Of a DNA stretch of 64,000 nucleotides, positions 18,441-46,872 are shown piece after piece. The notes under the pieces were generated by a model. That model worked only from the letters and a program-made list of their open reading frames with translations, was not told the origin of the DNA and did no database searches. The DNA lies in assembly GCA_000320545.1 (NCBI GenBank), contig ADNK01000166.1, positions 1 to 64,000 on the forward strand. Direction: 5' to 3'. The position numbers and the translations under genes are program-made. Each line of letters starts with the position of its first letter. Position 1 is the stretch's first letter. Origin of the DNA: Bigelowiella natans CCMP2755 (Eukaryota > Protista > Cercozoa).

Positions 18441-18688
18441 CAGGTAGTGGCCAATGGCCAAGTCGCATGACAAAGATCTCCTACATCATTGCATCATCAT
18501 GGCACTTTTCGAGTGATCTTGCTGTTTCGGAACATTCCTAGCAAATTCTTTCTCCTTCTGATGCTTGCCGAACTCCATGTGTGCTAGTACATGTAGTGGT
18601 GTCTCTGTCTTCCACAGACTCAAAACTCAATCGCCGGTGAAGGCGCTCAAAACACACTAAATGGGGAATGAAGACTCCCGCATGTTTC

Positions 18689-19037: not shown

Positions 19038-20447
19038 ATGAAGTCAGTCTGGACTAAAGCCAATGAAGTGGATTCTTACAATGAAGAAGAAGAAGTGACG
19101 ATGTTCGTGAAGAGAAAGCTGTTCATAGCCAGAGTTTCTTCAGTCTCAGCGAAACAAGCACTGGTGACATATGTGAATGAAGACACCGGGGAAGATGAAA
19201 TGATTCTCAGGAGACAATATGCACTTCGGCCTGCTGAATCACTCTCTCTGAGGAACTTTAGAGATGAATCATTTAGGATTCCACTACCTCGCAAAGCCAT
19301 AGATCTAGCTCGACACCTTGAGGAAGGGGATGTCATCCAAATTGTCCAAGCCACAGTAACCTATGCTGCAGATGGTACCTCTGAAGATGTTTTACTTCGG
19401 GCTCCCCTGATCTCTGGTAGATTAAATCGAGAAAAGGTCAAAACCTGCGAGGTGGTAGTTGAGGACAACCTCTCTGTGAAATTTGATGAAATATTGGAAA
19501 CTTGCGAAGCTTCTTCAGCAGATGCTACTTGTAAGGCTACTACTGCTGCTGCTGACGAGGTTGATGATGACGACACTGTCTCGACTGTCACCGAAACTGT
19601 TGATGGAGAACAGAATGACGTGATAGGCAACAGTGTTGATGAAATAGAACCTGAGGAGATGAAGGCACATGAGAGCTACGACTGCGACGACCTTGGGGAA
19701 AGGGTTTATGCTCAGATGGACTCAATCATTTGTAAATTGACAGGCATGTTTCTTGAAAATGAGAGGGAGCAAGTTGAAGCAGTCATATGTGATAAGTTTA
19801 CGCTTCGTGAGGAAATGATCAGAGCTTTACAGCATCTCAACGAAGCAGAGAAAGAAGAACAGCTGCCTACTTCAGAAGTGAAAACGCAACTGGATGCTCC
19901 TACTCGTGCTCCTGTGGTTCAGCCTCCAAAGACAAAGACTAAGCAAGATTGGAAGGATTTGAGAAGAAAATTAAGAGGAGAACCACAGTGTACTGAGAGA
20001 GCGAGCAATGTGAAGAGGGAGAAGGTTTCGAAGGCTCCAGAGGAATCTGAAAAGAAATCTGAGCTATTTAAATTGCATCGAGCAGATACCAGAACAATGA
20101 AGAGCCTTGAGATCCCTTCTCTGTTGAAGCCTATTCATGGTGGTGATGATGGCTGGAAGACTGTCACAAGCAAGAAACCCAAGAGAAGGTATCTGAAACT
20201 TCGGATCGAAGATCTTAGAGCTGGAGACGAGTACGTGGGAGAAGTTACGGACGCCTTCAACTTCGGTTGCTTCATAAACTTCGGATGTGAAAAGGAAGGA
20301 CTCATGCGCTATGCCCACCCACGGAGCAAATCTGTGGGGCCTAAGGACAGGTTCGGGGTGAAGCGGGGGCAGAAAATGAAGGTCAGGGTGTTCAAGGCTG
20401 ACAGCTGTCGTCGAAGGATTTATCTAGACTTTGTCCATTATGCCTGA
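19038..20447 (+). CDS. Intronless 469-aa putative RNA-binding protein: S1-like domain - acidic linker - MLLE(PABC)-like domain - basic region - S1 domain
   Basis: Uninterrupted ORF. C-terminal LRAGDEYVGEVTDAFNFGCFINFGCEKEGLM...VKRGQKMKVRVFKADSCRRRIYLDF fits the S1 pattern. LGERVYAQM...KLTGMFLE...LREEMIRALQHL fits MLLE (LGExLY...KITGMLLE). The N-terminal FIARVSSV...DLARHLEEGDVIQIV is S1/OB-like (weaker). Confidence 0.7.
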   Translation: MKSVWTKANEVDSYNEEEEVTMFVKRKLFIARVSSVSAKQALVTYVNEDTGEDEMILRRQYALRPAESLSLRNFRDESFRIPLPRKAIDLARHLEEGDVIQIVQATVTYAADGTSEDVLLRAPLISGRLNREKVKTCEVVVEDNLSVKFDEILETCEASSADATCKATTAAADEVDDDDTVSTVTETVDGEQNDVIGNSVDEIEPEEMKAHESYDCDDLGERVYAQMDSIICKLTGMFLENEREQVEAVICDKFTLREEMIRALQHLNEAEKEEQLPTSEVKTQLDAPTRAPVVQPPKTKTKQDWKDLRRKLRGEPQCTERASNVKREKVSKAPEESEKKSELFKLHRADTRTMKSLEIPSLLKPIHGGDDGWKTVTSKKPKRRYLKLRIEDLRAGDEYVGEVTDAFNFGCFINFGCEKEGLMRYAHPRSKSVGPKDRFGVKRGQKMKVRVFKADSCRRRIYLDFVHYA

Positions 20448-20714
20448 TGTGGTACAAAAGTCTAAAGGAACAAAAAGTAACAATCATTACGGGCTGCAAA
20501 TTGTCACAAGGGAATATCGGCGTAACCCTGAAATTACCGTCTGGAACGGTGCGTCTATTTTCGAATTTTCCTTCAAGACCGTTCCCATCTCAGCGCATGT
20601 GTTTGATTTGGATGCAAACGTTGTCATGAACATGGAACAATTTCACTACAGCATCAACACTGTCTAGCTGTGCATGTGCCTGTGCATTTGCATGCACGTG
20701 TGTGCGAATCTACA

Positions 20715-20748
<34 letters not shown>

Positions 20749-21454
20749 CGCGCGCGCTTGGTGCCATGTGTGCAAGTTGTTGCTGTCGCTTGCTAGCTTG
20801 CTGCCCACTGTGCGCCATTTGCAGGCTGAGCTCCCAATGAATGCCATGGAAATCAGTGAAAAAAAAAGCCACAAAAGGCAAGTGTGTTGCAATGCATGTC
20901 ACATCGGCACAGCGTTGTGGCCAGCAAGCCAGTTTCCATGTGAGATGCAGTCTGGCAAGCACTCGCTGCTGAGCATGGTCACGTGTCACGGCAGTTTGTT
21001 GTCAAATCCAGACGACAACTGCATGTGAAAGCAAGTCTGATGCTGTGTCGTGCAGCGTGTTGCACCGTCAGTGGGGCCAGCTGTTGCCACTGCACGCAGC
21101 ACACACAACTGCATGATAGACATGCAATGCACTATGTGTATGACACATATTATGATAGACATGCAACACACTATGTGCATAATGTACATTGTGCATTGCT
21201 GTGTCTGTCATCTGTGACACAACATGCAAACATGCACGATGCAATGAGCAGCACTCATCACGCAATGACAACGTCATGATGGTCTGCACCATGCACGCAA
21301 TGAGCAGCAATCATGACAACATTTTGATGACACTCCATGCGCACAATGAACAGCATGCATCACTGGTCACAACGCTTTCATGGTCTCCATGCACGTGGCA
21401 ATCCCTGCACCAGGACTGAGGTCCTCACCAAGCTTGTTTAGACAACGACAAAGA

Positions 21455-21505
21455 CAACGATGAAAAACAACGTTTCCAAGTGGGTGTTGCAAGACACTTG
21501 CAAGG
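21455..21505 (-). mobile_element. Degenerate LINE 3'-tail copy
   Basis: gatgaaaaacaacgtttccaagtgggtgttgcaagacacttgca resembles the reverse complement of 45835-45875. Confidence 0.55.
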
Positions 21506-21618
21506 AAAGCATGACTCATCAAAAACTGCGAGTGAAAATGGCTTCATGCAAATCTCAGGATGAAAGAGCTGGCAGGAAATGGGATGAGAAGGAACACATC
21601 GATGATGAATGGATGAGT

Positions 21619-21795
21619 GAACAATGAACAATGAACAATGAACAATGATGACGAACTACATTTCCAAAATGTTGCAAGACATTTGCAGTGTGCGAAATGC
21701 AGTGCCTCGAACTGGCTTCAGTGAGGACTGTGACTAGCAAATCAACTAGCTGGTTTTTCAAAATGGCATGATTCAGTCATTGTGAAGCAATGACA
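21619..21795 (-). mobile_element. 5'-truncated LINE 3' end (3' UTR + (CATTGTT)n tail)
   Basis: Aligns over ~175 bp to the reverse complement of 45721-45900, e.g. cagtgcctcgaactgg-ttcagtgaggactgtgact-gcaaatcaact-gctgg; heptamer tail (gaacaat)n. Confidence 0.85.
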
Positions 21796-22103
21796 CTAGG
21801 AACATGTCCTTTTTATCCTGTGTGCAAATGCAAGTTCACTGCTGACAATGTCTCTGTGGACAGAATTGACAAGATGAACAACTGAAGGGTAGAACTTAAC
21901 ATTTGTGGGAGCATAACATCGGAGGAATATCAGATATAATTTGGTCCAAAGAAATCGCATCTAACGACAACATCCACCTCACCTACATCCGGTTCAGCCA
22001 GCCCCCGGGCTGCTCTTCGACACATAACAAAGAGCGTGTTGGACGGGCGAAGGCCTCACAGCGAGCCTGCAACTAACACCCTGCAAGCGGGAAGGCGGGT
22101 TAG

Positions 22104-24660: not shown

Positions 24661-27048
24661 CGTGTCTACATGTGGGGTGTGCGAATGCAGGTAGTGAGTT
24701 TTGGTGAAACCCTAAATGGTTGCTGGTTGACCGATTTCACACCAATAAATACGGCTGGAAGTCGTGGTATGAAACGAAATCTTACTTGGCTTCCTGAGTT
24801 TTGTGTCTCGGTTCCCGACTCCTACTTTCGAGCGATACCTTGAAATTCCTTCTTTTTTTTTTTTATCCCGCGTCCTTCTCCTCGCTTTCTCGCCCCCTCC
24901 CCTCTCACCTGCCCCTCTTTCTTCTTTTTGTCCAACCCCAAAAAAAGGGTTGGATCTCCCGTTAGACATGTCTCCGACTTTGACGGGCAAAGATAAAGCT
25001 AAAGACGAGGCGGTTGACGCGACGGGTCTAACAGAAAAAGGTGAAGGAAAAGGGAAGGGAGGAAGAGGAGAGGGGGAACCAGCAACAACAACAGCAGCAG
25101 ACGAAGGAAAAAAACAAAATCAGGAAGAGCCGCAAAAGATCGCGAAAGGCAGCAATAGCAAAAGCCCTGCTGGGAAAGACAAGATCGAGAAAGGGGGTCC
25201 AAACAGCGCCTCCGCAAACGAGACCAATGTCGGGGCTAACGATAAGATTGATAACAAACTGAAACTTCCAAACTCTAGAAAGCTAGCAGCAGCGACAGGA
25301 CCGAAAATGCCTGATTCAGGCCGCTCGCACAGTTCTACGCAAACCGGCAGATCAGAGGGGGCACAAAGCGTCAGCTTGAGGTCGCTCATAGATTTCGATT
25401 TAGATGAAGAAATGAAGCGCCGTGATGATATCGACGCTGAAGATAGTGGCCACCAGAATGGGGAGGGTGACGCTGCAGCGCCTGCAGCTGCTGCTGCCTC
25501 CGCAACAACAACAGGACTTTTCTTCAGGGACCCCAATGAAGGTGCGGATGATTCAGACGAAAAGGGCAACACGAAGAAAAACGGCCTCCTCATCAAATTA
25601 ACATCGCCATCGATGCATGAGGCGATTCTGTCCCACGATGGTGATGATAATGATGAGAGAAAGAATAGCGCAGGAGCTGATCTCGCTGAAGGACAGGTCG
25701 GCAGTAGATCGAAACCAGGTGGGAGGGAAGCAACGACGACCCAAAACGGCCACTCTGATGCAGGAGGCACTCCCAACGGCCCTGGTTATTATTACAACAA
25801 TGAACAGCACATTCCTGCTCGTTCTCATCTGCAACAACGATACCCTCCTCATCACCCAGCTTCAAGCATCTATGCGCAGCAGCAGCAGCAGCAGCAGCAT
25901 CAGCATCATTCCCAGAATTTAGGAGATGGTGGTGCTGATCGAGGATATCGCTCGTATCACACGGGCCAAATTCAACGCTACAAGAGGACTCATCCCTCTC
26001 CGTCTCCTCACCATTACCAGCAGCAGCATCCATTCGGTCAGCATGTTGCACAGGGGGGGGGACATCGTCCCGCTCACTATCATGCAGATGACGACGACGA
26101 CGATGATGACGATGATTTGGTGGCGCTCTTCCATCCTGGCTTTGCAAAGCGGCGTGGAGACCACCACCGTCGTCACGGCCGTCATCATCCGCAGCGCGGG
26201 GTAGAAAGTGTGCAGCCGGGGCAGAGCGGAGGGAGGGGCCGTCCTTCCACAGAGACAATCTCAACAACGGAAGCTGACAGTGCCTATGCGACGCGACTTT
26301 CGCGTGGTGGAGCCCGCGAAAGAAAGAGGGCCTCACGCGCTCGCTACCCTCCCCACGGAACGCAGAACAGCAGCCAAAGAGACAATAGCAGTGGCCGTGG
26401 GAGGGGTGGGAGGTTGCGCAGCAACAGCAGAGACGAAGAAGGTGACCACGCCAGACTGTCAATGTCCTCCTCCTCCTCCACGGACTCCGAGGACCTTCTC
26501 ATGGCACTCAACTCCCTCCCAGCGACGACGTATCCAGCAGCAGCGGCATCAGCAGCAGCTAGAAACCGCCTGACCACAGGCTTTGAGTCTAGTAGGACCG
26601 CGGAGGGCACGCGGAGCTCACGGTTGCATAAGCAGCCCACAGCAGCAGTCATCGCGCCGGATCAGTCGATGCTGCGGCGTGGGCGCCGCAACTTCTTCGG
26701 TGAGAGAAAACGTGATGATGATGCTTCCGAAACGCATCTTGACGGCAGCAGTCTTTGTCGGTACAACGTCGGCATCGTCGAAGCAGATCGTAGCGGTCCC
26801 CGGCACAGGTGCGCGCAGGTGACATGCCCCCTACCCACGCAGCACACCTCGTATGAGAAGGAGGCGGCCATTTTCCACCGATCCGGACCGCCGAAGGACA
26901 TCCGGCTGCATCATGTTTATGGCATGTCGTCGTTGTATCATCATGGCCCGGCGCAAAAGGCCTGGTACTGCGGGCCGAGAAGGGATGGAACTCCAGGCGG
27001 TTTTGTCTTTGCATCGGCAGCGCTTGGAGTTGTGCAACATGAATATAG

Positions 27049-27091
<43 letters not shown>

Positions 27092-27589
27092 ATTTTTCGC
27101 TTTTTTCTTCTCCTCTTCTTCTCTGTCGTACTATATATGTAAGCCTAGTGCCCGTGAATGTGTGTATATATGTTTAAAGCACTTTCTCCTCATCATTTTC
27201 CTTGTGCTGCTGCTGCTCCTTTTTCTTCTTCTTCTTCTTCTTCCTCTTCCTCGTCGTCCCCACCACCTTCCTTTTCGCGCCTAGGCCTCTACGCATCCGC
27301 TCGCACGAGACCACTACCGACCCGATCCAGCGTTTCTTCCGCGGCCACAAATCCGAGCGAATCGAATGCATGGCGCTCAATCGCTCCCGCACCGTGGCAG
27401 CCACCGCGTCCCGGACCCCATCATCGTCGCCATCGTCATCGTCCTTCACCGTTTTCGTCTGGCATCTACATGGTGGGATGCAGCGGGTGTGCTCGTTCCA
27501 GCTCGGATTCGACAACGTCTCGGCCCTGGCCTTCAGCACGGACGACAAGGAGAATGCTCTGTTCGTGGCAGGGAGCCGGTTAGTAGTAA

Positions 27590-27624
<35 letters not shown>

Positions 27625-27993
27625 AGATCGTAGGTGGTTGCGCATGCGGCACGGCCGCACTGAGGCAGAGCTTTATAGACTTTCAGCTGTGATCATGCGA
27701 CTTTATGTGCACGCAGTGTTGGGCTGTCCTTCTCCGCTCTGCTGCTGCTACTTTGTCGTTGAATTACATGTACATTCAGGTGCAACAGGCCGACGTTGAG
27801 CGGCTGGTACTGGCGAGAGCACAAGCACATGATGGACATTCGACTCCCTATTATTAGCTCCTACTCGCAAACGCAGGGGGGGGGCGGGGAAGGAGATGGC
27901 GGCTTTACAGCACCTGGTAGTTAGTAAACTGTGATTGTGTGTGTGTGAGAGAGAGAGAAAGAGAGGGAGAGAGAGAAAGAGAGGAAGAGAGAG

Positions 27994-28033
<40 letters not shown>

Positions 28034-29408
28034 CAACGACGATGAATGTTCCTTGCAGTTTAGCTTCTTTCTTCCCTTATACGCTACGTCTGAGAGCACT
28101 TAACATCATCTATGCTAGCCAATGATTGTGTTCTATGTACCACTACCTGTTTCCCCTTCCCCCCCCCCCCCACTTTCTCTTCTCCAATCATATCCCAACG
28201 TTGGCATCAGGCATTGTTGGAATGTCTGTGGAGTCTATCATCGCAGGAGGAGATCGGTACATTATTGCGTGCTTGTTATTAGCAGCCCTTCGACTGGATG
28301 GAGACCCTCTTCCCTTTTCTTCTATTTCTGGGAATCGTGTCATTTTAATTTGCTTCACCAATATACTGGTTACAACACTTTTAGTTTCTCTGATTTTACC
28401 TCCGTCCCTCCCCTTCCTATCTCTCTATCTCTCTCGCTCGTGATAAGGAGAACGGCAATGTTCCACGTGCTTGTCTGGGGCCGCTGTCACCTCTCCGTGT
28501 CGCTGGTAGGAGAGAACATCGCTTCTTCACAGGCTCTCAGCGTAGAGTCCCTGCCACCGTTACCGCAGCCAGCAGCGGGAGGGGGGGGGAGAAGTTCGGG
28601 GTCAAAACAGGACAAAAAGGCGGCGGCAGCACCGTCACGGCCACGTGGCGCGCATCCGAGCAACTACGGTGGCGGGCAGAAGGAGAAACTGAGCCAGCAC
28701 CTCATCGAGGCGGCGCTCCTCCTCCCTCCCCTCCCTCCTCCTGACCGTTCTTCGGCAGCTTCGAGCACCCAGCTGCTAATCAGCACAGATTGCGGGGCCC
28801 TATATCGGATCGGTGCTAGTGATCTCAACGCCATCGTCGTCAGCGGCGCTCGTCGCCGACTTCCCGCTTCATTCTCCTGGGCTTCCGTGCCGCGGAACGA
28901 CGTCGTTTGCGCCATGTGCGCCGCCAGCAGCGGCCCCAAGGGCGGCCGTGCGCAACACGACAGTATTTTCGCCGCAACGCGGGGCTGGATGCTTCTCGTC
29001 TACTCGGCAATGTCCTCAGCGCCGTTGCAGCCGCACTTCACCGTAAGCTTCAGGGAGTATCGATGCAGGCCGGAGATCTTCCGCTGCTCGCCCGCGCTTG
29101 AGTTTGGGTCGGACGAGGAGATTGTGGATACCCTTCTGGAGGGGGGAGGGCACCGTGCACCGGACGAGTCAGTTCTCCGCCAGCGTGGTAGTGGCGTCGG
29201 TAGGGTGAGGAGAGGGCGAGGGGGTGTTGTCGGAGTCGACGCTTGCTGTGGAAGAGCACTAGTCTCCATGTCCAACAATCAGGTCGACGTCAGAGTAGTA
29301 GTAGTAGTAGTCTTTTGCCATGTGGTGTGCACTCTTCACGTTGTGCTTTTAGTTGTGGTAGCAGTAGCAGTAGCAGCAGCATTATCAGTAGTGAGGCTCA
29401 CGACACAC

Positions 29409-29447
<39 letters not shown>

Positions 29448-29479
29448 CACAAGACACTCAGCCATAGACACCTCGTCTA

Positions 29480-29538
<59 letters not shown>

Positions 29539-32500
29539 CTGCCAGATTTATGAGGTCGATCTCGCCCGCCGAGAAGCGTCCGTGGTACTGTATGGCGCTT
29601 GTGAGAGGCCCACTGATCTGGCGGGGACAACATCGCTGAACCGCGTGGCGAAGTGGATGCCGGAAGGAGAAGGTGGGGGAGGAGGGGGGGGGCCATCCTC
29701 CATCTTCGCGCTCTCCGCTCAAGTATTTCCTACAAGAAGACGACGCCGACACAGCAACGACGCCAGAGCCGCTAATGGCGGGGATGAGGACGATGGCGAT
29801 GGTGGTGGCGACGACGACGATGAAGCAACAAGTCGAGGAGGGCGCGCATACGGCCTCGTTTATCTGTGGAATCTCAAGAAGAAGTTCCAGCTGCCGGTTA
29901 TTCTAGTCATGGATGCGCCTGTGAGCGCCGTCGCTTTAGGAGGCTGTGGGCCGTCATCGCGGAAATGGGGCGGGGGGAGGGAGGTGGGTAGAGACCGACC
30001 CGTCGGTCGTCCTCCTTCACTAATCCATCGTAGCTCTCTGCTGTCGCATGCCGCAAGTACTAGTGAGGAGACGTTGAGAGTAGCCATCGGCACACGGAGC
30101 GGCAAGATCGTAGTTGTTCAATACCCTTCCGTCGTTGTGGAGACGAGTATCAACCTGAGCGCCTACAGCAGCAGCAGCAGCAGCAGCTTTCGGGGTAGCC
30201 ATCAGGATGACACCAAGTGGGTTGGTAGAAAGAGAACCTCGGCCCCTGCTGCATCCTCGTCTTCTCCGTCGTCGGCGTCGTCATCAGCCCCGCCGCCATG
30301 TGCAATATCACTCCTAGAGCACATCTCCCTCCACACGTTAGCTGCTGCAACGAGGTGCGGGGAGCTCTTTCTCTACAATCTGAAGCAGAAATCGGTCAGT
30401 CCTGTCATCCTGAAGAAGACGTCCTCACCGCCGTCATCATCACCACAAGCGGCGGCGCCAGCCGCAGGGAACAGCGGCCGAGGTCATAGCACCAAAGCCC
30501 CCGCGCCGCTCAGGGACAGCAGCCAAGTGTTGAGCGTCGAGCTGGATGCATCGTCCAGCCTGCTTTCTACATGCCACAGCAACGGGACGATGCGCTTCTT
30601 CAGAATCCGCACCCTCCCCTCGCAGGAGCTCTCGATGACATCTCCGGAGGTCCGAAACGCGGTCTGGATCCCCAGGAGCGGGCCCTTCGGCTATTGTATC
30701 CGCGGGGTTCTACTCAGCGGAGAAGACTCCTCCAACCCCTTGGCCCAGCAAACGCTCACATCATCCTCCTCCTTGCGGATGCACCAGCGGCGACGGCAGG
30801 GAGGGGACGGGAAGGAAGAGGAGGAGGAGGAGGCGGAGGAGGAAGAGGGTCGGCCCTCCCCCCTAGCTGACATTGCTCTAGTTGTATCCGAGCGTCATAG
30901 GATCGTGGTAACGGCTGGTGGGTGGACGTCGATGTCGTCCGCGCCGTCGTCATCATCTTCGTCGTTAAGGCCAAGTAATACTGAGATAATCCGGGTAGCA
31001 CCATTCCCGTGTCTCTTCAGTAGCACAAGAACGTTTGTACACTCGGCGCATTCGGCGGCGCGCCGATCCTCCTCCTCCTCCTCCTCCGCATCATCATCAT
31101 CAGCAGCAGCAACACTACCAGCATCACCACCATCATTGCCCCGCCTTAAGCTGGCATTTACAGGGGCCGATCGTTTCTTGATGTCGACCTCACGAAGAGA
31201 CCGCATCGCCGTTGCTTGGTTGGTAGTGCCAGCAGCAGCAGGAGCAGCAGCAGCGGCGGCAGACAACACCGCTCCTTCCCCATTCCTCTCGCCTTCCGTA
31301 ATCGACGACACGCACCAGCAGAGCCGGGACGGGTACAGTCGCAATGGTTTCCAGCACCACCACAGCGATGGCGATGATGGGAGAGAGGATGCCATGTCGC
31401 GCGCTTTGGGACTCGCAGCGTTCCACCGCAGCTGGCAAAGAGTCAGAGACGGCGGCGGCGGCGGCGGCGAAAACAGCCTTACTAAGGGTGACTACAGCGA
31501 CGATTTGCAAGCTAGAAGAGGTAGGGGGGGGAGGGCAATTCATGAAGGTGGTAGGAGTAGTTATGGAGGACAGCTACGTGGCCACATCCCAGCGTTCGGA
31601 GATAGGGCCTGGGGCGGAGGAGGAGGAGGAGGGTGGGCCGGAGCTAAAGCCGCCGCCGCCAGCGGCGTCGGCGACATCGACCATGATGATGGCAGCTCTT
31701 GGGAGTATGGTGATGGTGAGGAAGACGACGCTGGTGGCGACTCATCCTACTACTACAGCGAAAGCGGCGGCGAGGAGGAGGACGACGAGTATGATGACAT
31801 AAGGAACACCGGAAACCATTGGGAATACACCGATCCCAAAACGGGTAAGTAATCAAGGCGCATAATTTCGTGCACGCTCTGTGACAACGCAGGTTTATAT
31901 CTGAACACCATGTCTGTTTCTCCCCTTCCCACCCCTCTCCCCTCGTCCTCCCCCCCCCGGTCGCTTCCAGGTCAGCCATGGCGTCACCAATCACACCCCT
32001 ACTTCAACAAGAAGCGGCGGCGGGGGGGGGGCGGGGGGGCGCAACAACGCCGACCGCGCGCTCTTCGGCGCGGCTACGAGAAAAGGAGGGCAGAGCTGTC
32101 AGTTCCACAGTTCCAAGCTCTGAGCAAGGCCCTGCAGAAGAAGCTCTCGGAGCAGACCGCTCGAGCGACGCTCCTGAAGACGGAGCATCAGCGCAGCAAT
32201 AAGAGCTGCCAGCACCTGGAAAAGTACAGCAACCTCCTGGCGCGACATGTCGCGAGGGACCGCGCCGGCCATGCGATCACGAAGGAACAGCGCAGGCAGA
32301 TACTCCGACACCACTCCAAGATATCGCAGCTGAGCCTGCGCTTCCAGATGCCTATCGCGAGCTCTCGCGACAAGTGCAGCAGTAGTCGAAGCAACGCTGG
32401 TGGGGCTGTGAGTGGCAGCTCCAGGAAAAGCACGCTTTTCCACGCTTATGAGGAGAACAAACGGCTCAGAGAGGAATGCCTTCGCCTCGAGGCGATGGTC

Positions 32501-32539
32501 TCCCGGCTTCAAAAAGTGAAGAGGCACACCAGGAGATGA
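22104..32539 (+). CDS. Very large EML/EMAP-like protein: long low-complexity N-terminus, HELP motif + WD40 repeats, WW-like segment, C-terminal coiled coil (5' start not identified)
   Basis: Phase-consistent exons 22104-22314, 22521-22603, 22732-22943, 23255-23430, 23581-24552, 24966-27048, 27285-27578, ... ~29546-31845, 31893-32539. HELP-like PPKDIRLHHVYG...FVFASAALGVVQ is followed by QRFFRGHKSERIECMAL...VFVWHL...VSALAFS. Exons between 27.6 and 29.5 kb are only partly resolved. Confidence 0.65.
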
Positions 32540-33244
32540 CGACTCAAATATGCAATGGCAAGATTGCGCTCTGTGATGTGTGCGCGTGCATCGCATGCAT
32601 ATGAGATCACAATTGCAAATACATGATTCAATCAGAATGTGAGGACTTGCGTACACATGCACGGACAATCAGGCACAAGTGACACAATATGGAAGACTCT
32701 ATGCCAATAATGCCTGACAGCACTTTGCGCATGAAATTGCAAGCAAAATGAAATGCCTATGCTAGAATGCTGCCCACTAGTTTGCCTGTCTAGCTGTGTG
32801 TGCGTGGTGTGCATTGCCATCTTTGTCACGGCACCGCAGCTACTTGCGTGCAATGCGCTCATATGTAAACATTGCAGCTGCGAGTGATGCGGACTAGCTA
32901 ACAAATAATGCACTTGAGTGCATCAAGTGCATGTAAAATGTAATGTTTGGCATGAATTAAAGGTCACTGTTGTGTGGTGAGACTCTCATGTTGCGAGCGT
33001 GCTAGCGTGGCTGCATGGGACATGCATGTTTCGATTGATGCGGGTAGCGTCAATTGCGCGCAGTTTTTGTTAAAGAAGGATCATGCAACTTGGCGGCGCA
33101 CCCACATTCACAGCGCCCGACTGTGCCATTATTTTTTGCTGTGCGGACGACTGACCATGATGTCACTAATGGTAGCAATGTGCCTAACCACAAGATCGGC
33201 TGAAAAATCATCATCTAAATGACGCTTGGAGGCACACAAAACGA

Positions 33245-39676: not shown

Positions 39677-40150
39677 GATTGTTTTGAAATCGATTGACTC
39701 AATGTTGCTTTTTCATCATCGATTGTGTTTTGAGTTCCTAAACAGAATCATTCATTGTGCTGTTGCTGCGCTTCTGCTGTTCCTGTGCTTCTGCTTGACA
39801 ACAATGCAATTCCATAGTCTCATCGGTTGTTTCCGTTGCCATGCTCGGACAATTCCTTTCATTTTCACACATTCACTTCACCCCCATCTCAATCCATCAC
39901 ACAAGCGCGAACGCGCATCCTGAAAATTCTGTAGCCTTCATGGCTGCATAGCGTACGCACGTGCGAACACATGCAGTTCAGTGCACATGTTCTTTGCAAC
40001 ATGTGCTCCATTTGCAGCATTTTTTCACCTGCACATGTCCCAAAGTGAACATTGAATGGGATCAAAATTCATTTGGCACATGGACACAATGTCCATGTGC
40101 GTGTGCGCGTGAGGAACACACGTGCCCAGGCACACCACATGCACCCAAAA

Positions 40151-40542
40151 TGTCAGAAGTGCAAGGCGACGCGCTGCAGAATGCAGGCCAGCAGCACAGT
40201 CAGATGAAGGAAGGAAGGGTGGGAGGACAGCTGCACAAGCGGCTGCCTCGATTCTCTGTTGAGTTCTGACCTTTTCACATGCATGCACCAAGTCAACTGT
40301 CATCAGGCGAAATCACCTGAACCACGTGCATGACATCGTGCTGCAGAAGGAAGGAAGACGCGCCCACTTCCTTTGCTGGCACATGGCTGATGCAGCACTG
40401 TCCTGCCCTTGTCGCAGGCACAGAACCTGCCTGCATCAACAGCCCATTCTGCACTGCTTGTCGCAGCCTGCAAGTGCCCGCCAGCGTTGCTGCTGCTGCC
40501 ACAAGCATGCACTTCGCGCATTGAGTGCAAAGCACTCCAACA
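40151..40542 (-). repeat. 3' LTR
   Basis: 389/392 identical to 43370-43761 by eye. Confidence 0.9.
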
Positions 40543-43369
40543 CGCTGCCCTTTCCTTCAATTTGCTGTGCAGCAAATTGCGAAGTGCAACACACGGGCGA
40601 TGTGTTGTCACCGCATGCTCCAGGACAGAAAAGATGACCATGCGCATCATCAAAAACTGTCCTGGCCAGCATGCCAGAGCCAGAGCAGACAAAAACAACG
40701 GCTGGCACGCGTGCATGCGTGCATGCATGCATGCAGCCATCGTGAAAAACTGATCTGCTCAGTCTCACGAGCTGCCAGGATCATTGATCCTGCAGTGGCA
40801 CCGCTGGGACAACGTCCCACGACCACGCTGCCCTTTTCCTCTCTTCTGTTGATCAGCAAGAGAGGGGGGAAAAAGGCGATGCCCATTGGGGTGCATCGTT
40901 TCGGAAAAAATGTGAAAAGAAAAGGAAAGCACCACTTCGGTGTTCCTTCAAATGCCCGCACCAGAGTGAGAAAAGCAACAAGTGCTCAAACACTTGTTCG
41001 CTGACTCACAAATCCAAAGCCCGTGACAAGCACCCACGGCTGGGGTGCAAGGTGCACGGAGGGAGAGGGGGGGGGAGGGGAATGGAGACACTTGCATGGA
41101 GAGGCCATGCACCTGTGGGTGATGCAAACACCTGCAGCGTGTGTCAAAATGAAGTCACAGAAGCTGAAGGCAGAGAAGCTGCCTTGGCTTCAATTTCCTT
41201 TCCGGGGCCGTGTTGATCACGGCCCCATTGCAGGTGCAGACAAGACATCAAGATTTCGTTGAGGCCGTTCTTCGGAGCATCACTGACGGAGGTGCATGCT
41301 CTTCTCACAATTGAGCTCAAGAGTCATGTGTTCGTGTGTGTGCTTTCAACTGAACGCTTCGTTTGCAATTTTTGTGTTCATGGCAATCACTCAGAAGTCA
41401 CACGGGATCCACAATTCAGAAACACAGTCAGTCAATGAAGTGGAGGCAGAATGGACGTCTCCATTCTGTTGCCCACCCATTTCCTGACTGTCATCTTTTT
41501 GCATTGTCGTCCCACATGGTTGACCGTGCTCACAGACTGGTCGTGGAGGATGGCTGTGACACTTCATCACGTGTGACTGTGCCGAAATTCTGTTTTGTCA
41601 CAATCGCATGACGTTGATTGTGTTGACATCGTTCAATCTCGAGTCGCAATGTTCGTTGGTCGGTGATGTTGCTACGAGCATCGTCCTTCGATCATTCGAT
41701 GGCATTGCCTGCGGTGTTCGTTTGTTCAATGGCGCTGAACAATTGGTTTTTTTTTGTTTTCAGGATCCTTTTCATCTGCGCAAGCGATTGTTCTTCAGAG
41801 CTTGCGTGGTTCGTTTCCGACACCAGCCGGCACAGACCACAATTGTCGATTTCGGTGTCAATGTTGACCCTCACCGATTGACCTCTGACAGGTCGGAATT
41901 GACAGGAGGACTGTGAACATTGACATCGAACAACGGGGATGTCTCCAAGGCAATTGCTTTGATTTCATTCGATGCAACATTCTTCTTCCGCAAGAAGGCG
42001 CTTGCGTCGAACCCCCATTCCTTGGGTCAAGTCGTGAGTTCACCGTCGTTCAACATCCTCGTGTGGGTCACCCAGGACTTGCGAGCGGCAAAGAACGCTG
42101 CAACCCTGCAGGTGCACCGGATGTGTGATGATGCATGGAGATTTCGACACCGGAGGTGTTGTCAGCACCTCCGTGATTTCATTGCCCATTTTCGCATCGT
42201 GTGTTTGCGGTCGCATGCCCGCACATCACAATCATGATTGCGGCACTGTCCGGAAAAAAAAAAAATGCAAGCATGCGTTGTGAATCGGTGCATGATTCTT
42301 GATTGTGACCCCGTGATGCAAATCGCGCTCATCACAGTGTCGGCATGAGGCTGTCAATGATTGCTTTGTTCATCAGGTAGCCGCGATTTGCCACTCACGT
42401 TCCGGGCATTGCAGGCCGCAGCGAACGCAGGTTGGCATGCTTTTCCTTGGAATCAATTTCATTTTCGATTTGTTCACATCATCATGAAAAATTTGTGCAC
42501 TTGAATTTGGCATGGTGCAAGCAAGTGCGAGAGATTCACAAATCGTTTCACTGTCACACGGTGTGCGTTTCTTGGATTCACTCATGAGTGCACATCCTTG
42601 AATCGCATTTCTGCATGCTGGACTGTCACTTTGTCGCACGTGTCACTCATTCATTCCCTGCAATTGTCACAGCATGGGAGAGCATGGTGGTTCAGCCACT
42701 TGTCGTGATCCACCATTCTCCGATGTGGACAACACTCTGATGCCACGGTCGTGTTCTCAAGGTTCGCAAATCTTTCCTTGATCTGTCAAGATCCAGATGA
42801 GACCATTGTTTTTTTTCATCAGATCGTTGTGGCATTTGTCTCAGGGAAGAACAGTGTCCCGCTGTTTCGTTTCATGGCACATGCCTGGGATGGGAATCTT
42901 GCCAGGGAACAAGGGGCAATTTGATCATGACAACAACTTTTTGGTTGCAAGTGGTCATGATTTCATTTTCGAGTTTCAATTTGATCATGACAACTTTGTG
43001 GTTGTGATTCCATTTTCGTGTTTGATGGGGAACACTTTGATTTCGCTTTTTTTTTCTTGTTTGCTGTTTGTTCCTTGTTGCAGTTGGTCGATTTGACTTT
43101 TTTTTTGAGTTTTGCCCCTCTGTTGAGTCACTTTGCTTGGTTGCAAATTTTTGTTTTTGAGTCATGGGTGATCACATTTCGTTTTGTTCCAACACAGATT
43201 CATTCTTTCCAGACTGGTTGGATTTTCGGTGCACCAGCACCTAGCAATCCGACCATCACCGACCAAGTTCGTGTCGTGGCACCTTCAAACCAGTTCTGCC
43301 AGACTGAACTGTTTGAGCCAAGTTTTTTTGGGCGCAACTGGGCGGCGGAAGCCGCGTGGGCTCACAACC

Positions 43370-43761
43370 TGTTGGAAGTGCAAGGCGGCGCGCTGCAGAA
43401 TGCAGGCCAGCAGCACAGTCAGATGAAGGAAGGAAGGGTGGGAGGACAGCTGCACAAGCGGCTGCCTCGATTCTCTGTTGAGTTCTGACCTTTTCACATG
43501 CATGCACCAAGTCAACTGTCATCAGGCGAAATCACCTGAACCACGTGCATGACATCGTGCTGCAGAAGGAAGGAAGACGCGCCCACTTCCTTTGCTGGCA
43601 CATGGCTGATGCAGCACTGTCCTGCCCTTGTCGCAGGCACAGAACCTGCCTGCATCAACAGCCCATTCTGCACTGCTTGTCGCAGCCTGCAAGTGCCCGC
43701 CAGCGTTGCTGCTGCTGCCACAAGCATGCACTTCGCGCATTGAGTGCAAAGCACTCCAACA
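43370..43761 (-). repeat. 5' LTR
   Basis: Adjacent to the PBS at 43358-43369. Confidence 0.9.
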
Positions 43762-43859
43762 CAAAAAGCACACGTGCTCCATTCACATCCAGAGAGAGCC
43801 CTGATGGTGAGTGCAAGCACTTGTGTGATGGACATGGCAACAGCACGCACAACACGTGC

Positions 43860-45923
43860 ATGACATCACGTGTCCATCGTCTCAGTGCCCTCAGCAAGCT
43901 GGTGTCTGGAGCTGCAACGACGAGAGTCCATGAACACCTGGAAAACGACAACTGTCTTGCGGATGAACAAGGTGATTTTGGAAGGAATCGTGGCACTGAC
44001 TTCCACATCTTCAACCTGTGCCAAGTGTTGCATCTCCGCAAGGCCCAAAACCAAGGATCCACAGTTGCTTTCGTTGACCCACGCAAAGCCTGTGATGAAG
44101 TTTGGATCCAAGGTCCACGAGCTGAGCTGCTCAGGAGTGGTGTGACGGGCAGAGTGTGCAACCTCTTCAAGAACATGCTGGCCTCCCAATCCCGCAGGGT
44201 TGGGTCCCCGATTGATCAAGCTCTGAGCCAACCCTTCCACGTCAACCAAGGTCTCCCTCAAGGTGCCCCGGAATCACCAGTTCCACTTGCTCTGTTTGTT
44301 GACGACCTCACAGAACGGCTGAGACAGCGTGGTTGTGGCGTCCAGTTTGCCAACACTCGTGGACCAGGTCTCTTCTTTGCAGATGACAGCGCTCTGGTTG
44401 CTGCCACTCCTCTGGACATCAAGCTGGCTCTTGAAGTGACGACTCAATGGTGCAGAAAATGGAGACTCAAGGCAAACGGAGATGAGTCTGGCATCACGAT
44501 TGTCGGGTCTTCTGTTCTCAAACAGGAGTGTTCACGATGTGAGTTCAGGTGTTGTGGGGAATTGATGCGCGCAGTGAACCAATGTCGACACTTGGGAATT
44601 GCCTTCCAAAGCTCCTTGTCGTTCCACACACACATCGTGGACACTGTGAAAGCAGCGAAGCGAGCTTCCGGCAGGCTCAAGTGCAGCTTTGCTGGACACT
44701 CAGGCCTCCGACCCAGAACACGGATCCACCTTTGGAATGCTCTCGTGCGCCCCACTCTTGAACGTGGCATGGGTCCAATTTGTCCCATTCTGCCCCAAGC
44801 TGTCTCAAAAACCGGCTGCAGAGTGTCCAGACTCAGTTCCTCAAAGAGACTCTTCGTGCCCTGCACACAGCCCATGGCCAACCACTGTGCTTCCTGTTGT
44901 CTGAACGTGGCCAGGAAGGTTTGCAGGCCCGCTGGGACAAGTCTCTCGTGAGCCTCCTGAGCAGGATGCGTCAGCAACCTGATGAATCCATGACAAAGGA
45001 TCTTCCACTCCTGTCCCTGGATCAGGCTGATGCTCTGTGCTCAAGTTGGGGTCACAACGTTGGGTCTGTTCTTCACCGTGTCACTGGCTGTGACCAATCT
45101 GCCTGTGGCTTGGACCTGTTGGTCAACTTGGACCAGTCCCATCCAAAACTGGTTGATGTTGACCTCAATCGCAGAGTCAGGGCTCACCTGTCCACCAATG
45201 GCAACTTGTGTCGCAGCTTTTGCTCGTTCGTCAAACCCGACATCCCAACTTGCAAATCCAGAGCCTGGGCGAGGAGCCACATTGGAAGGCCAGCTTCCAG
45301 ATTGTTTGAGTGTCATCTTGATGATTGACAGCATGACAATTCAGGTGTGTTGCTCAAACTTCAGCTCCGCGCTGGGACTTGCGAAACTGAGGAGCACAGG
45401 GCCAAAGTTTGCAACTTGCCCCCCTCTTTCTCGGTGTGTCCTCTTTGCAATGCTGAAGTTGTTCAAAGTGTCAACCACCTCATCCATCATTGCACTCACT
45501 TGAATGCAGAGAGATGCAAGCTTCTCTCGCACATGAGATCAGCTCTGGGTTCAGCTTCTTCCCGCCACTCTTCATTCTTTGACGCTCCAGACTCCTCCAA
45601 AACCAAAACTCTGCTGGGGGCCCCCTCAGATGATCCAATCGCAGATCGTCATGTGGACATGGCCTTCAGGAAGTTTTTGCTCAGAGTGGAGGTCTTGCGC
45701 CGTCAGAATTTTGCTGCTGATGTCATTGCTTCTCAATGACCAAGTCATGCTGATTTTGGCAAACCAGCCAGTTGATTTGCCAGTCACAGTCCTCACTGAA
45801 ACCAGTTCGAGGCACTGCACTTTGCACGCTGCAAGTGTCTTGCAACACTTTGGAAGTGTGGTTTTTCATCATTGTTTCATTGTTTCATTGTTTGTCATCA
45901 TTGTTTCATTGTTTCATCATTGT
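43860..45923 (+). mobile_element. 5'-truncated non-LTR retrotransposon (LINE) ORF2 remnant: RT domain, C-terminal CCHC zinc knuckle, 3' UTR, (CATTGTTT)n tail; frameshifted and TpA-erased
   Basis: EQGDFGRNRGTDFHIF, AFVDPRKACDEVW, QGLPQGAPESP, LFFADD, WRLKAN, QCRHLGI (RT); CPLCNAEVVQSVNHLIHHC (zinc knuckle). Frameshift near 44770; in-frame TGA at about 45326; tail 45867-45923. Confidence 0.92.
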
Positions 45924-46272
45924 CTTCTCTCTTTCTTTCTCTTTTTCGTCTTCTCCCTTTCTGTCACCAGGCTTTTCCTTTTTTGAAACGCTTCGCATTG
46001 CTCGTTGTGACTGAAAAATGGCATCAATGTGCACGATTGCACAATTGATGTCACGTCGTTGTCTGCTGCGAAACACAACACACATCCACAATCATGCATG
46101 TTCGGCGCACGCTAGCCAGTTGGCACGCACGTGCGATGCACGTTTGTCTTGCTAGCTTGCAAGCATGTTGCATTTGACCTCTGCATGTGCAGCACTTCTG
46201 CCATCAATCGCTCCGTCGCAGCAATGAAGCGTGAAGTAAATGCATGCGCATGCACGTGCCGAACGTGTCTAG

Positions 46273-46310
<38 letters not shown>

Positions 46311-46872
46311 TGTTGTTGTGTGTGGCGTTGTTGTGTGTGATGTTGTTGTGTGTGTGTGTGTGTGTGCACCGCACAGCAGCTAGCAGAGCGCTACAGTTGT
46401 GCTGCGTGCGTGCACCTGCGTTCATTTCGTTTGCTAGTTTGCGTGCGCGGCATGCTAGCTAGCAGCATGCGGAACGACATGTTGCAAATGATCATCAAAT
46501 CAGCCGATGCACGGCATTGTCCCTGCTCGCTATCATTGCGGGGCGAATGTGATGAAGTGATCAAATCTTTTCTGCAAACATGCACACGTGCAGCCGTGGA
46601 ATGCTAATTGCTAAATGACACAAACGCACTTGCTGTGCCGCAAATTGCACACAAGTGTGTGTGTGCATTCATCTGAACTATAGAACATACTTTCTGCTCT
46701 TTTTTTTACCATTTGGTTTTATTATTTCGAAACCTTGTGCAGAACTACACAGCACATTTATTTCTTAATGATACGTATGTATCGAAATGAATGGAAGAGT
46801 TCGTGGGACAAATTTTGGGTGGCTTCTACTGCACTGATGAAAGGCGAATAATTAACAATTCATCTATTCCTC

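What the first reader, a model, noticed from the sequence alone, without database searches (positions are those of the whole stretch)
39956..46112. 6.1-kb transposon block with TpA almost completely erased: a 'reverse-RIP' A:T>G:C hypermutation
Reading the block line by line I find only 3 TpA (41673, 42378, 43242) in ~6150 bp, where base composition predicts a few hundred. CpG remains common, so this is not CpG decay. Direction is shown by conserved motifs. RT KAYD reads KACD (TAC>TGC). YxYLGI reads CRHLGI (TAC>TGC and TAC>CAC). VDL reads VDP (CTA>CCA). GFR reads (D)FG. The copia PBS GGTTATGAGCCC reads GGTTGTGAGCCC. Both outcomes (TG and CA) occur on one strand, so the process is strand-symmetric and most likely acts on DNA. 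Fungal RIP makes C>T and creates TpA; this is the opposite polarity. I know no characterised enzyme for it. A DNA adenine deaminase with a 5'-T preference, or error-prone repair in silenced chromatin, is inference. This is the best candidate for an undescribed genome-defence system here.
Basis: partly seen in the sequence, partly recalled or inferred. Interest (0 to 1): 0.93.

Follow-up and report, generated by a model that had tools for sequence, protein, structure and literature searches.

The report
TpA-erased retrotransposon nest in Bigelowiella
A 6.2-kb nest of two dead retrotransposons in the alga Bigelowiella natans has lost almost every TpA dinucleotide to TpG or CpA; this is a real host-driven hypermutation of foreign DNA, but a 2026 preprint already reported it in this species and its enzyme is still unknown.

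Summary
Window 39955-46112 holds 3 TpA where about 365 are expected, and CpA and TpG are enriched.

The direction is now shown directly. Two environmental relatives with normal TpA content (L002, L009) carry 146 alignable TpA sites. In the window these read CA 67, TG 61, CG 6 and other 12; none is retained. The change needs a 5' T, is equal on both strands, and mildly disfavours a 3' G.

The block is one insertion bounded by a 12-bp target-site duplication. It is a 5'-truncated LINE-like element (RVT_1, FADD) carrying a nested, non-coding LTR element.

Paralogues and a host gene place the window in Bigelowiella natans. Mettrop et al. (bioRxiv 2026) saw TpA>TpG/CpA mutations arise de novo in that species and found TpA-depleted RT genes. 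The process is therefore already described, though without a known enzyme.

Increments found here:
- The erased zone coincides with the insertion.
- Most of the erasure was inherited from progenitor copies.
- CTAG sites go last.
- A diverged environmental relative keeps TpA only in two conserved Tyr codons.

The parts
39955..39966 (+). Left copy of the 12-bp target-site duplication ACGCACGTGCGA that bounds the whole insertion
   Evidence: this 12-mer occurs only twice in 64 kb, at 39955 and 46125 (0.01 expected by chance).
39967..40150 (+). 5' part of the outer insertion, TpA-free. Presumed to be the truncated LINE upstream of the LTR insertion, but with no detectable homology
   Evidence: 0 TpA, CA O/E 2.31, TG O/E 2.37; no RT relative aligns across the junction, so assignment to the LINE is inferred only from the enclosing TSD.
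40146..40150 (+). Left copy of the 5-bp TSD (CAAAA) of the nested LTR element
   Evidence: CAAAA lies immediately outside both LTR ends (40146-40150 and 43762-43766).
40151..40542 (-). 3' LTR of the nested LTR element (392 bp, TG..CA termini), with 0 TpA
   Evidence: it differs from the other LTR at 3 nucleotides. One difference is the terminal CA (40154-55) against TG (43373-74). CA is 50 against 28 expected and TG 41 against 20.
40543..43369 (-). Internal region of the LTR element. It has no recognisable gag or pol, a PPT-like purine run next to the 3' LTR, a PBS-like GGTTGTGAGCCC (reverse complement of 43358-43369) next to the 5' LTR, and the 3 surviving TpA
   Evidence: no Pfam family reaches its threshold in any ORF piece; the one hit under E 0.1 (D8C_UMOD, 14.6 bits against a cutoff of 27) lies in the LINE part (44762-45325), not here; the sequence itself; the survivors at 41673, 42378 and 43242 all have GCTA on one strand.
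43370..43761 (-). 5' LTR of the nested LTR element
43767..45925 (+). LINE-like non-LTR retrotransposon fragment. It holds the RVT_1 reverse transcriptase (FADD motif), a C-terminal domain and a 3' UTR ending in a (CATTGTT)n tail. It is frameshifted and encodes no Tyr codon
   Evidence: RVT_1, E 1.3e-13. RT relatives align from 43782 to 45890; 79-81% nucleotide identity to the TpA-normal relatives L002 and L009; three copies diverge after the (CATTGTT)n tail.
45926..46124 (+). TpA-poor tail between the LINE 3' repeat and the right TSD, possibly 3'-transduced sequence. It contains the one further TpA (46113, GCTAGC)
   Evidence: It lies inside the 12-bp TSD.
46125..46136 (+). Right copy of the 12-bp TSD
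21602..21795 (-). Second, short copy of the same LINE 3' end. It is only partly erased and keeps TpA at 3 CTAG and 1 GTAG

Best explanation
The block is a single old insertion in a Bigelowiella natans nuclear genome. It is a 5'-truncated LINE-like retrotransposon into which a non-autonomous LTR element later inserted. Both have been stripped of TpA by the host's locus-targeted TpA>TpG/CpA hypermutation of foreign DNA, the process seen arising de novo in B. natans mutation-accumulation lines.

Shown here:
- Direction. Relatives with normal TpA carry TA where the block has CA or TG.
- An absolute 5'-T requirement.
- Equal hits on both strands, which implies action on chromosomal DNA rather than on RNA or first-strand cDNA.
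- A mild 3'-neighbour hierarchy (C > A = T > G) that makes CTAG the last context to go.
- Coincidence of the erased zone with the TSD-bounded insertion.
- Inheritance of most of the erasure from already-erased progenitor copies, with the remaining sites hit independently after copying. Those late sites are the LTR terminus, probably the PBS, CTAG sites and some Tyr codons.

Inferred:
- The chemistry is deamination of adenine to hypoxanthine, read as G, by a TadA/ADAT2-family enzyme.
- Targeting follows a silencing mark or small RNA on foreign DNA.
For: Organism:
- RT paralogues at 80-91% identity are JGI Bigna1 models.
- A host ORF is 98% identical to Bigna1/85363.

Signature:
-.

Direction and specificity:
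- L002 (TpA O/E 0.89) and L009 (0.91) against the window give 146 comparator TpA sites: CA 67, TG 61, CG 6, other 12, retained 0.
- A>G frequency per A is 0.49 after T, against 0.10-0.14 after A, C or G.
- Y>C/H, L>P and R>G changes occur at conserved RT positions.
- Three Bigna1 paralogues have 0 Tyr in 768, 473 and 360 aa, against a median of 2.5% Tyr among 154 relatives.

Strand symmetry:
-.

3' neighbour:
- Edited fraction is 0.62 for C, 0.49 for A, 0.49 for T and 0.37 for G (G against the rest, p = 0.025).
- 35% of TpA that survive in TpA-poor surroundings are CTAG, against 4.7% elsewhere (p = 2e-13, or 6e-8 without tandem GCTA repeats).
- My hand tally of the preprint's Table S2 gives a 3' G at only 20 of 206 de novo TpA hits.

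Inheritance:
- The two LTRs share the outcome at all former TpA sites but one.
- The block and the 21.6-kb copy share 15 of 16 doubly erased sites, while CTAG and GTAG sites are copy-specific.

De novo occurrence of the process in this species:
- bioRxiv 10.64898/2026.01.13.699255.

TadA precedent:
- TadA's natural motif is U(-1)A(0)C(+1)G(+2) (PMC10586758; PMC11472039).
Against: - No enzyme is identified here or in the preprint, and none is encoded in the block.
- A>G at the A cannot be separated from T>C at the T.
- The 3'-neighbour effect is modest, and target availability in the preprint's viral region is unknown to me.
- The host gene is 98%, not 100%, identical to the JGI model, so the window may be another strain or haplotype than the one used for mutation accumulation.
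- Because most erasure predates the last copying event, little of it can be shown to have happened at this locus.
- The polarity of non-coding differences rests on the environmental relatives being ancestral-like.
Confidence: 0.85

Rival explanations
1. Adaptive TpA avoidance. The element lineages stayed mobile under a TpA-targeted host attack and were selected to purge every dispensable TpA, much as phages purge restriction sites. On this reading most of the TpA-free state is an evolved trait of the family, not damage done at this locus.
For: - LTR outcomes are concordant, and the two LINE 3' ends share 15 of 16 outcomes. The copies were therefore made from already TpA-free templates.
- L001, a 53%-identical environmental relative, has only 2 TpA in 1106 bp, and both are in the Tyr codons of the conserved YRYLG motif.
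- The RT uses FADD, so its catalytic motif needs no Tyr.
- The only LTR discordance is at the integrase-recognised terminus, and the PBS-like site reads TG where a tRNA match would need TA.
Against: - The window copy and all three Bigna1 paralogues have lost conserved Tyr and Leu (KACD, DP, C/HRHLG) and are frameshifted or Tyr-free, so they are dead.
- Close relatives with normal TpA exist (L002, L009), so the family does not need to be TpA-free.
- This is a complement to the host mutator, not a replacement, because it still presupposes one.
Confidence: 0.25
2. The chemistry acts on the T rather than the A. Thymine in TpA would be modified enzymatically (for example TET/JBP-type oxidation to 5hmU or a further derivative) and then mis-repaired or miscopied to C.
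For: - TpA is self-complementary, so every count fits T>C at T-before-A as well as A>G at A-after-T.
- From my own knowledge, unchecked here: dinoflagellate 5hmU is reported to favour TpA and TpC.
Against: - 5hmU pairs with A and is not known to give efficient T>C changes.
- There is no sign of TpC involvement. Non-TpA A/T sites change at the background rate of 10-14%.
- The U-A-C preference of TadA-type deaminases matches the observed hierarchy.
Confidence: 0.12
3. Editing occurs during retrotransposition: ADAR-like A>I on element RNA, or deamination of first-strand cDNA, fixed when the copy integrates.
For: Identical outcomes in both LTRs and the TSD-precise edges are what editing before integration would produce.
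Against: - Outcomes are strand-symmetric within each element. RNA editing or single-strand cDNA editing would give only one of CA or TG in sense orientation.
- ADAR also tolerates a 5' A and favours a 3' G (established knowledge). Here a 5' A is at background and a 3' G is disfavoured.
- The same signature arises de novo in a single-copy integrated DNA virus with no RT step.
- Copy-specific late hits at CTAG sites are seen.
Confidence: 0.04
4. Sequencing, base-calling or assembly artefact at modified DNA.
For: None found. The possibility is raised only because systematic miscalls at modified motifs exist on some platforms.
Against: - The same Tyr-free state is seen in independent JGI Bigna1 gene models.
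- It is also seen in an independently assembled environmental metagenome contig (L001).
- The changes are fixed differences inside an alignable family.
- De novo events were called from Illumina reads in the preprint.
Confidence: 0.01

Closest known systems
TpA>TpG/CpA hypermutation of integrated viral and other foreign DNA in Bigelowiella natans (Mettrop et al., bioRxiv 10.64898/2026.01.13.699255, 2026)
   Same: Same species. The dinucleotide target, transition outcomes on both strands and restriction to foreign DNA all match. The block meets the preprint's own cluster criteria, and that study found RT domains enriched among TpA-depleted CDS.
   Different: - The preprint's hypermutable viral regions are only partly depleted (rho 0.45, or not depleted), whereas this block is about 99% erased.
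- The preprint's main text has no match for 'context', 'CTAG' or 'retrotransposon'. It therefore does not discuss 3'-neighbour effects, element boundaries, LTR or copy concordance, or environmental relatives.
Repeat-induced point mutation (RIP) of ascomycete fungi
   Same: A dinucleotide-specific, strand-symmetric, DNA-level transition hypermutation that is confined to invasive DNA and destroys coding capacity.
   Different: - Polarity is opposite: RIP turns CpA into TpA and creates TpA, whereas this process destroys TpA.
- RIP needs duplication and a premeiotic stage and depends on the DNMT-like RID/DIM-2. The B. natans process hits a single-copy viral insert in vegetative lines.
TadA/ADAT2 tRNA adenosine deaminases and their DNA-acting derivatives (ABE TadA variants)
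   Same: A>I chemistry gives A>G. The natural target has an obligatory 5' U and a 3' C (U-A-C-G), which matches the obligatory 5' T and the C-favoured, G-disfavoured 3' neighbour found here.
   Different: - No natural eukaryotic enzyme is known to erase TpA across kilobases of chromosomal DNA.
- No +2 G requirement is evident.
- The candidate Bn78255 named in the preprint is untested.
ADAR hyper-editing and APOBEC3 editing of retroelements
   Same: Deaminase-based restriction that leaves hypermutated retroelement copies in genomes.
   Different: Those systems act on RNA or first-strand cDNA and leave strand-asymmetric spectra (A>G or G>A in sense orientation). Here the spectrum is symmetric and also arises in integrated DNA.

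Membership tests
B. natans TpA hypermutation (Mettrop et al. 2026) | Host is Bigelowiella natans | tested here: met
   the nearest RT relatives are Bigna1 models at 80-91% identity; a host ORF is 98% identical to Bigna1/85363, with scattered differences, so the window may be another strain or haplotype.
B. natans TpA hypermutation (Mettrop et al. 2026) | [quoted passage not shown] | tested here: met
   six consecutive windows (40001-46000) pass, with rho TpA 0.00-0.02 and rho CpA+TpG 1.54-1.81.
B. natans TpA hypermutation (Mettrop et al. 2026) | Changes are A>G/T>C, confined to TpA, and occur on both strands | tested here: met
   134 of 146 comparator TpA became CA, TG or CG (67:61:6). A>G per A is 0.49 after T, against 0.10-0.14 after the other bases.
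B. natans TpA hypermutation (Mettrop et al. 2026) | Target is foreign DNA (virus or transposon) | tested here: met
   RVT_1 domain. LTR pair and TSDs.
B. natans TpA hypermutation (Mettrop et al. 2026) | Mutations arise de novo at the locus in vegetative lines | not testable with these tools
   This needs the mutation-accumulation reads. Only 4 TpA targets remain in the insertion.
Fungal RIP | C>T at CpA, creating TpA; a high TpA/ApT index | tested here: not met
   TpA/ApT = 3/328, and (CpA+TpG)/(ApC+GpT) = 1280/751 = 1.70. This is the inverse of RIP.
ADAR-type RNA hyper-editing fixed by retrotransposition | A>G on the sense strand only; 5' U or A tolerated; 3' G favoured | tested here: not met
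   CA and TG are equal within each element, a 5' A is at background, and a 3' G is disfavoured.
TadA/ADAT2-family deaminase as the agent | Target context U/T(-1)-A-C(+1) | tested here: inconclusive
   The 5' T requirement is absolute. A 3' C is favoured (0.62) and a 3' G disfavoured (0.37), p = 0.025. The preprint's Table S2 tally has a 3' G at about 10%. The effect is modest and the enzyme itself was not examined.
TadA/ADAT2-family deaminase as the agent | A CDA-fold HxE/PCxxC deaminase that acts on this DNA | not testable with these tools
   No deaminase is encoded in the block. The candidate Bn78255 is named only in the preprint.
LTR retrotransposon | Two near-identical LTRs with TG..CA ends, a 5-bp TSD, and a PBS and PPT next to the LTRs | tested here: met
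   392-bp LTRs differ at 3 nucleotides; the TSD is CAAAA; PBS-like and purine-rich tracts lie on the minus strand.
Ty1/copia superfamily | Copia-type gag, protease, integrase and RT (RVT_2) domains | tested here: not met
   no Pfam family in any internal ORF piece. The only copia-like trait is a PBS resembling the complement of a tRNA-Met anticodon arm, which was not verified against a B. natans tRNA.
Non-LTR (LINE-like) retrotransposon | RVT_1 reverse transcriptase, 5' truncation, simple-repeat 3' tail, variable-length TSD | tested here: met
   No endonuclease domain is present because the copy is truncated.

The most novel reading that the evidence does not exclude
Retrotransposon lineages of chlorarachniophytes are in an arms race with a TadA-like, TpA-specific DNA mutator.

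Elements kept being copied while the mutator eroded them, which produced families that are nearly TpA-free. TpA persists only where it is functionally indispensable (Tyr codons of YRYLG, LTR termini, PBS) or kinetically protected (CTAG). Those last sites are erased only after a copy dies.

This would make TpA content a clock and an activity marker for these elements. It would also show that the mutator operates in wild populations beyond the cultured strain.
Probability: 0.3. Interest if true: 0.7.

Novelty: already known. Interest (0 to 1): 0.5.

Why it matters
A eukaryotic genome defence that rewrites A:T to G:C at one dinucleotide would be the mirror image of fungal RIP. It would also be a natural DNA adenine editor. 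Both would interest genome-defence research and base-editing research.

The phenomenon was reported in 2026, so this block is a rediscovery. It is still a clean end-state example, with about 99% erasure exactly within TSD boundaries. It adds constraints that any enzyme candidate must meet:
- an absolute 5' T requirement;
- a 3' neighbour order of C > A = T > G, with CTAG the last context to go;
- action on both strands of chromosomal DNA;
- no visible spill-over past the insertion on the left side.

It also shows that erased elements went on being copied. That bears on whether the system actually stops transposons.

Tried and rejected
- Pfam on 20 ORF pieces across the block (the LTR element's interior, parts of both LTRs and parts of the LINE) found nothing above threshold. 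The copia assignment could therefore not be confirmed.
- Pfam on ORFs of the smaller TpA-poor patches at 8.6-9.1, 18.0-18.5 and 20.6-21.7 kb found nothing meaningful. Sensitive blastn among those patches found no shared repeat. Whether they are old erased elements or native low-TpA intergenic DNA is open.
- tRNA and Rfam scans of the window were empty, so the PBS could not be matched to a host tRNA.
- DNA for the Bigna1 paralogues could not be fetched, so the comparison among genomic copies is at protein level only.
- The metagenome scan returned only distant RTs (22-32% identity), all with ordinary TpA.
- Inferring 3'-context preference from tetranucleotide excess in the block against the window background was too noisy to use. 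The polarised alignments replaced it.
- A deterministic context rule as the explanation for LTR concordance was rejected. The same hexamer ccTAcg gave CA, TG and CA, and palindromic contexts were also concordant between copies.
- tblastn across the reconstructed empty site found no RT homology left of the LTR insertion.
Full report
**1. Observation**

Window 39956-46112 contains 3 TpA (41673, 42378, 43242) against 365 expected from base composition. CpA O/E is 1.78, TpG 1.56 and CpG 0.64. The neighbouring TpA are at 39954 and 46113. The four longest TpA-free gaps of the window (705-2871 bp) all lie in this block; the next longest is 323 bp. Six consecutive 1-kb windows have rho(TpA) of 0.02 or less and rho(CpA+TpG) of 1.54 or more. 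This is far beyond chance.

**2. Anatomy**

The block is a nest of two retroelements.

- **Outer boundary.** A 12-mer, ACGCACGTGCGA, occurs only twice in the 64 kb, at 39955-39966 and 46125-46136 (0.01 expected). I read it as the target-site duplication of one 6158-bp insertion, 39967-46124.
- **LINE-like element.** On the + strand, 43767-45925 is a non-LTR retrotransposon fragment.
  - It has an RVT_1 domain (E 1.3e-13) with a FADD motif.
  - Relatives align from 43782 to 45890.
  - It carries a C-terminal domain and a 3' UTR that ends in a (CATTGTT)n tail. Three independent copies stop being alignable after that tail.
  - The copy is 5'-truncated and frameshifted.
- **Nested LTR element.** It sits on the minus strand at 40151-43761.
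  - The two 392-bp LTRs (40151-40542 and 43370-43761) have TG..CA ends and differ at 3 nucleotides.
  - The TSD is the 5-bp CAAAA.
  - A PBS-like GGTTGTGAGCCC directly abuts the 5' LTR, and a purine-rich tract abuts the 3' LTR.
  - No gag or pol domain is detectable in the interior. It is therefore a non-autonomous or fully decayed LTR element.
Calling the LTR element copia rests only on the PBS.
- **Unassigned stretches.** 39967-40150 and 45926-46124 lie inside the outer TSD but have no detectable homology. They may be a poorly conserved LINE 5' part and a 3' transduction; this is inference.

**3. Organism**

- The closest proteins to the RT ORF are JGI Bigna1 models, that is Bigelowiella natans CCMP2755, at 80-91% identity.
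- A host ORF (19038-20447) is 98% identical to Bigna1/85363, with nine scattered substitutions and a 2-aa indel.
- The window is therefore B. natans nuclear DNA, but perhaps not the identical strain or haplotype as the JGI reference.

**4. Direction and spectrum**

An exhaustive protein search and contig look-ups found two environmental relatives with normal TpA content.

| Locus | Source | Length | TpA O/E | Aligns to window | Nucleotide identity |
|---|---|---|---|---|---|
| L002 | Tara Oceans scaffold | 682 bp | 0.89 | 43893-44536 | 81% |
| L009 | ENA metagenome | 1598 bp | 0.91 | 44423-45892 | 79% |

Both retain the tyrosines that the window copy lacks: VYEY, KAYD, HYRYLGI, RYFEYY, AGTYETEEYRAKIYN.

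- Across both alignments there are 146 comparator TpA sites. In the window they read CA 67, TG 61, CG 6 and other 12; none remains TA.
- A>G, counted on both strands, affects 49% of A that follow T. It affects 10-14% of A that follow A, C or G, which is simply the background divergence of the pair.
- The three Bigna1 paralogues have no Tyr at all in 768, 473 and 360 residues. The median among 154 RT relatives is 2.5% Tyr.
TA>TG/CA is far above other transitions, and TpA-normal family members exist.

**5. Level of action**

- CA and TG are equal within each element: 238:238 in the LINE part and 379:370 in the LTR element.
- RNA editing or first-strand cDNA editing would give only one of the two outcomes in sense orientation. 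The agent therefore acts on both strands of DNA.
- Because TpA is self-complementary, A>G at the A and T>C at the T cannot be told apart.

**6. Context beyond the dinucleotide**

- At each erased TpA, the strand that was hit depends mildly on the 3' neighbour of the edited A. The fractions are C 0.62, A 0.49, T 0.49 and G 0.37 (G against the rest, p = 0.025).
- From the per-context table, the TAC-bearing strand was edited 29 times against 14. The non-TAG strand was edited 31 times against 16. This is my arithmetic, and the two tallies overlap.
- CTAG is the only tetranucleotide in which both adenines have a 3' G. In TpA-poor surroundings of the window, 22 of 63 surviving TpA are CTAG, against 128 of 2727 elsewhere (odds ratio 10.9, p = 2e-13). 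Without tandem GCTA repeats the figure is 15 of 56, p = 6e-8.
- The four TpA left inside the insertion all have GCTA on one strand.
- The three-way alignment of LINE 3' ends points the same way. The partly erased 21.6-kb copy retains TpA at only 4 of 21 ancestral sites, and these are 3 CTAG and 1 GTAG.
- CTAG is slow rather than immune. All 11 comparator CTAG sites are erased in the block.
- The preprint's Table S2 gives trinucleotide contexts of the 211 de novo mutations on scaffold 10. My hand tally is below.

| Change | Context counts |
|---|---|
| A>G | TAA 32, TAC 22, TAG 3, TAT 34 |
| T>C | ATA 33, CTA 17, GTA 30, TTA 35 |
| Other | 5 |

- Collapsed by the 3' neighbour of the edited A, this gives A 67, C 52, G 20 and T 67. 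A 3' G thus accounts for about 10% of hits, whereas about 21% of TpA in this window's background have one. Target availability in that viral region is unknown to me, so this is supportive but not conclusive.
- The main text of the preprint has no match for 'CTAG', 'context' or 'trinucleotide'.

**7. Timing**

- **Rate.** From the preprint's numbers there were 211 hits on about 6000 callable TpA over 3132 generations. That is about 1.1e-5 per TpA per generation.
- **Time to erase.** At that rate, 99% erasure needs roughly 4e5 generations. The background rate of 3.5e-10 would add only about 1 substitution per 7 kb in the same time. This is my rough calculation. Near-identical LTRs are therefore compatible with complete erasure in place.
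- **LTR test.** Erasure in place should make the two LTRs differ (CA against TG) at about half of their former TpA sites. A 392-bp LTR should have had 10-25 such sites. Only one discordance exists, at the terminal TGT[CA/TG]G. The probability is 0.01 or less for 10 or more sites.
- **LINE test.** The block and the 21.6-kb LINE 3' end share the same outcome at 15 of 16 sites erased in both.
- **Context cannot explain this.** The same hexamer gave both outcomes, and palindromic contexts were also concordant.
- **Conclusion.** Most erasure was inherited from already-erased progenitors, and erased elements went on being copied.
- **Late, copy-specific hits.** These are the LTR terminus, probably the PBS (TG where a tRNA match needs TA), CTAG sites, and some Tyr codons (CRHLGI in the window against HRHLGI in P0001).
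- **L001.** This environmental relative at 53% amino-acid identity has 2 TpA in 1106 bp (O/E 0.04). Both lie in the two Tyr codons of YRYLG. That is the pattern expected of a lineage under both the mutator and purifying selection.

**8. Comparison with what is known**

- bioRxiv 10.64898/2026.01.13.699255 (Mettrop et al., April 2026) reports the following in B. natans mutation-accumulation lines:
  - 230 of 231 mutations in two integrated viral regions are A>G or T>C, and the authors place them on TpA.
  - The rate there is about 1000-fold higher than in the rest of the genome.
  - 324 TpA-depleted CDS are enriched for RT, endonuclease-RT and DDE domains.
  - There are 124 TpA-depleted, CpA+TpG-enriched clusters in the genome.
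  - An ADAT2-like candidate deaminase is proposed.
- Full-text searches found no other description of the process.
- The block meets the preprint's cluster definition. The process is therefore already described, although it is unpublished in a journal and its mechanism is unsolved.
- It is not RIP. The polarity is opposite, and neither duplication nor meiosis is required.
- It is not ADAR- or APOBEC-like restriction of retrotransposition, because the spectrum is symmetric and the neighbour preferences are wrong.
- The obligatory 5' T with a favoured 3' C resembles the U-A-C-G recognition of TadA (PMC10586758; PMC11472039). That modestly favours a TadA/ADAT2-family enzyme.

**9. Verdict**

It is wrong on element identity and on novelty.
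- The increments from this work are:
  - the TSD-exact extent of the erased zone;
  - inheritance of erasure through copying;
  - the 3'-neighbour hierarchy and slow CTAG;
  - TpA-normal and TpA-erased relatives in ocean metagenomes.

Noticed in passing
L001 (ENA ERZ27286678, k119_682628), whole 1106 bp: An environmental LINE RT only 53% identical to the window copy is also TpA-erased (2 TpA, O/E 0.04; CA 1.49, TG 1.41). Both surviving TpA are the Tyr codons of the conserved YRYLG motif. This suggests that the mutator acts in wild populations and that selection holds essential TpA.
   Followed up: partly
window 8551-9200, 18101-18550, 20601-21900, 46137-46450: Smaller intergenic patches have TpA O/E below 0.3 and CA+TG O/E above 1.5. 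They are rich in TGCATG, ACGTG and (TG)n, and their surviving TpA are mostly (G)CTAG(C). They have no Pfam hits and no mutual similarity. They may be old erased elements or native low-TpA intergenic DNA.
   Followed up: partly
window 21117-21185: A 70-bp island carries 9 TpA inside an otherwise TpA-free kilobase. It is made of two copies of an approximately 39-bp unit (atgatagacatgcaa...cactatgtg...). Why it escaped erasure is unexplained; it may be a recent insertion or a protected site.
   Followed up: no
window 17843-17858 and 9380-9391: Short (GCTA)n tandem repeats, that is runs of CTAG, sit at the edges of TpA-poor patches. The motif cttgctagcttgc recurs at 20789 and 46148.
   Followed up: no
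window 11975-17306 (+): The host gene for the intron-binding helicase Aquarius lies in four long ORF segments (Aquarius_N domains, AAA_11/AAA_12, C-terminal SAP). The segment 16601-17000 inside it also scores as TpA-poor and CA+TG-rich.
   Followed up: no
window 24800-33000: An approximately 8-kb stretch has raised GC (56-59% against about 46%). It holds long + strand ORFs (779, 505 and 756 aa) with no Pfam family at E <= 0.01, and its TpA is not depleted.
   Followed up: no
window 19038-20447 compared with P0155 and P0156 (L010, L011): The host ORF differs from the JGI Bigna1/85363 model at 9 scattered residues plus a 2-aa indel. An 83%-identical homologue occurs in two JGI environmental data sets, which points to related Bigelowiella-like lineages in nature.
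   Followed up: partly
preprint Table S2, scaffold_10: De novo hits are listed as TAG 3 times but as its reverse complement CTA 17 times. Four T>C hits have contexts (ATG three times, ATT once) that are not TpA as printed. I did not explain either point; possible causes are gene-strand bias of targets or neighbouring hits.
   Followed up: no
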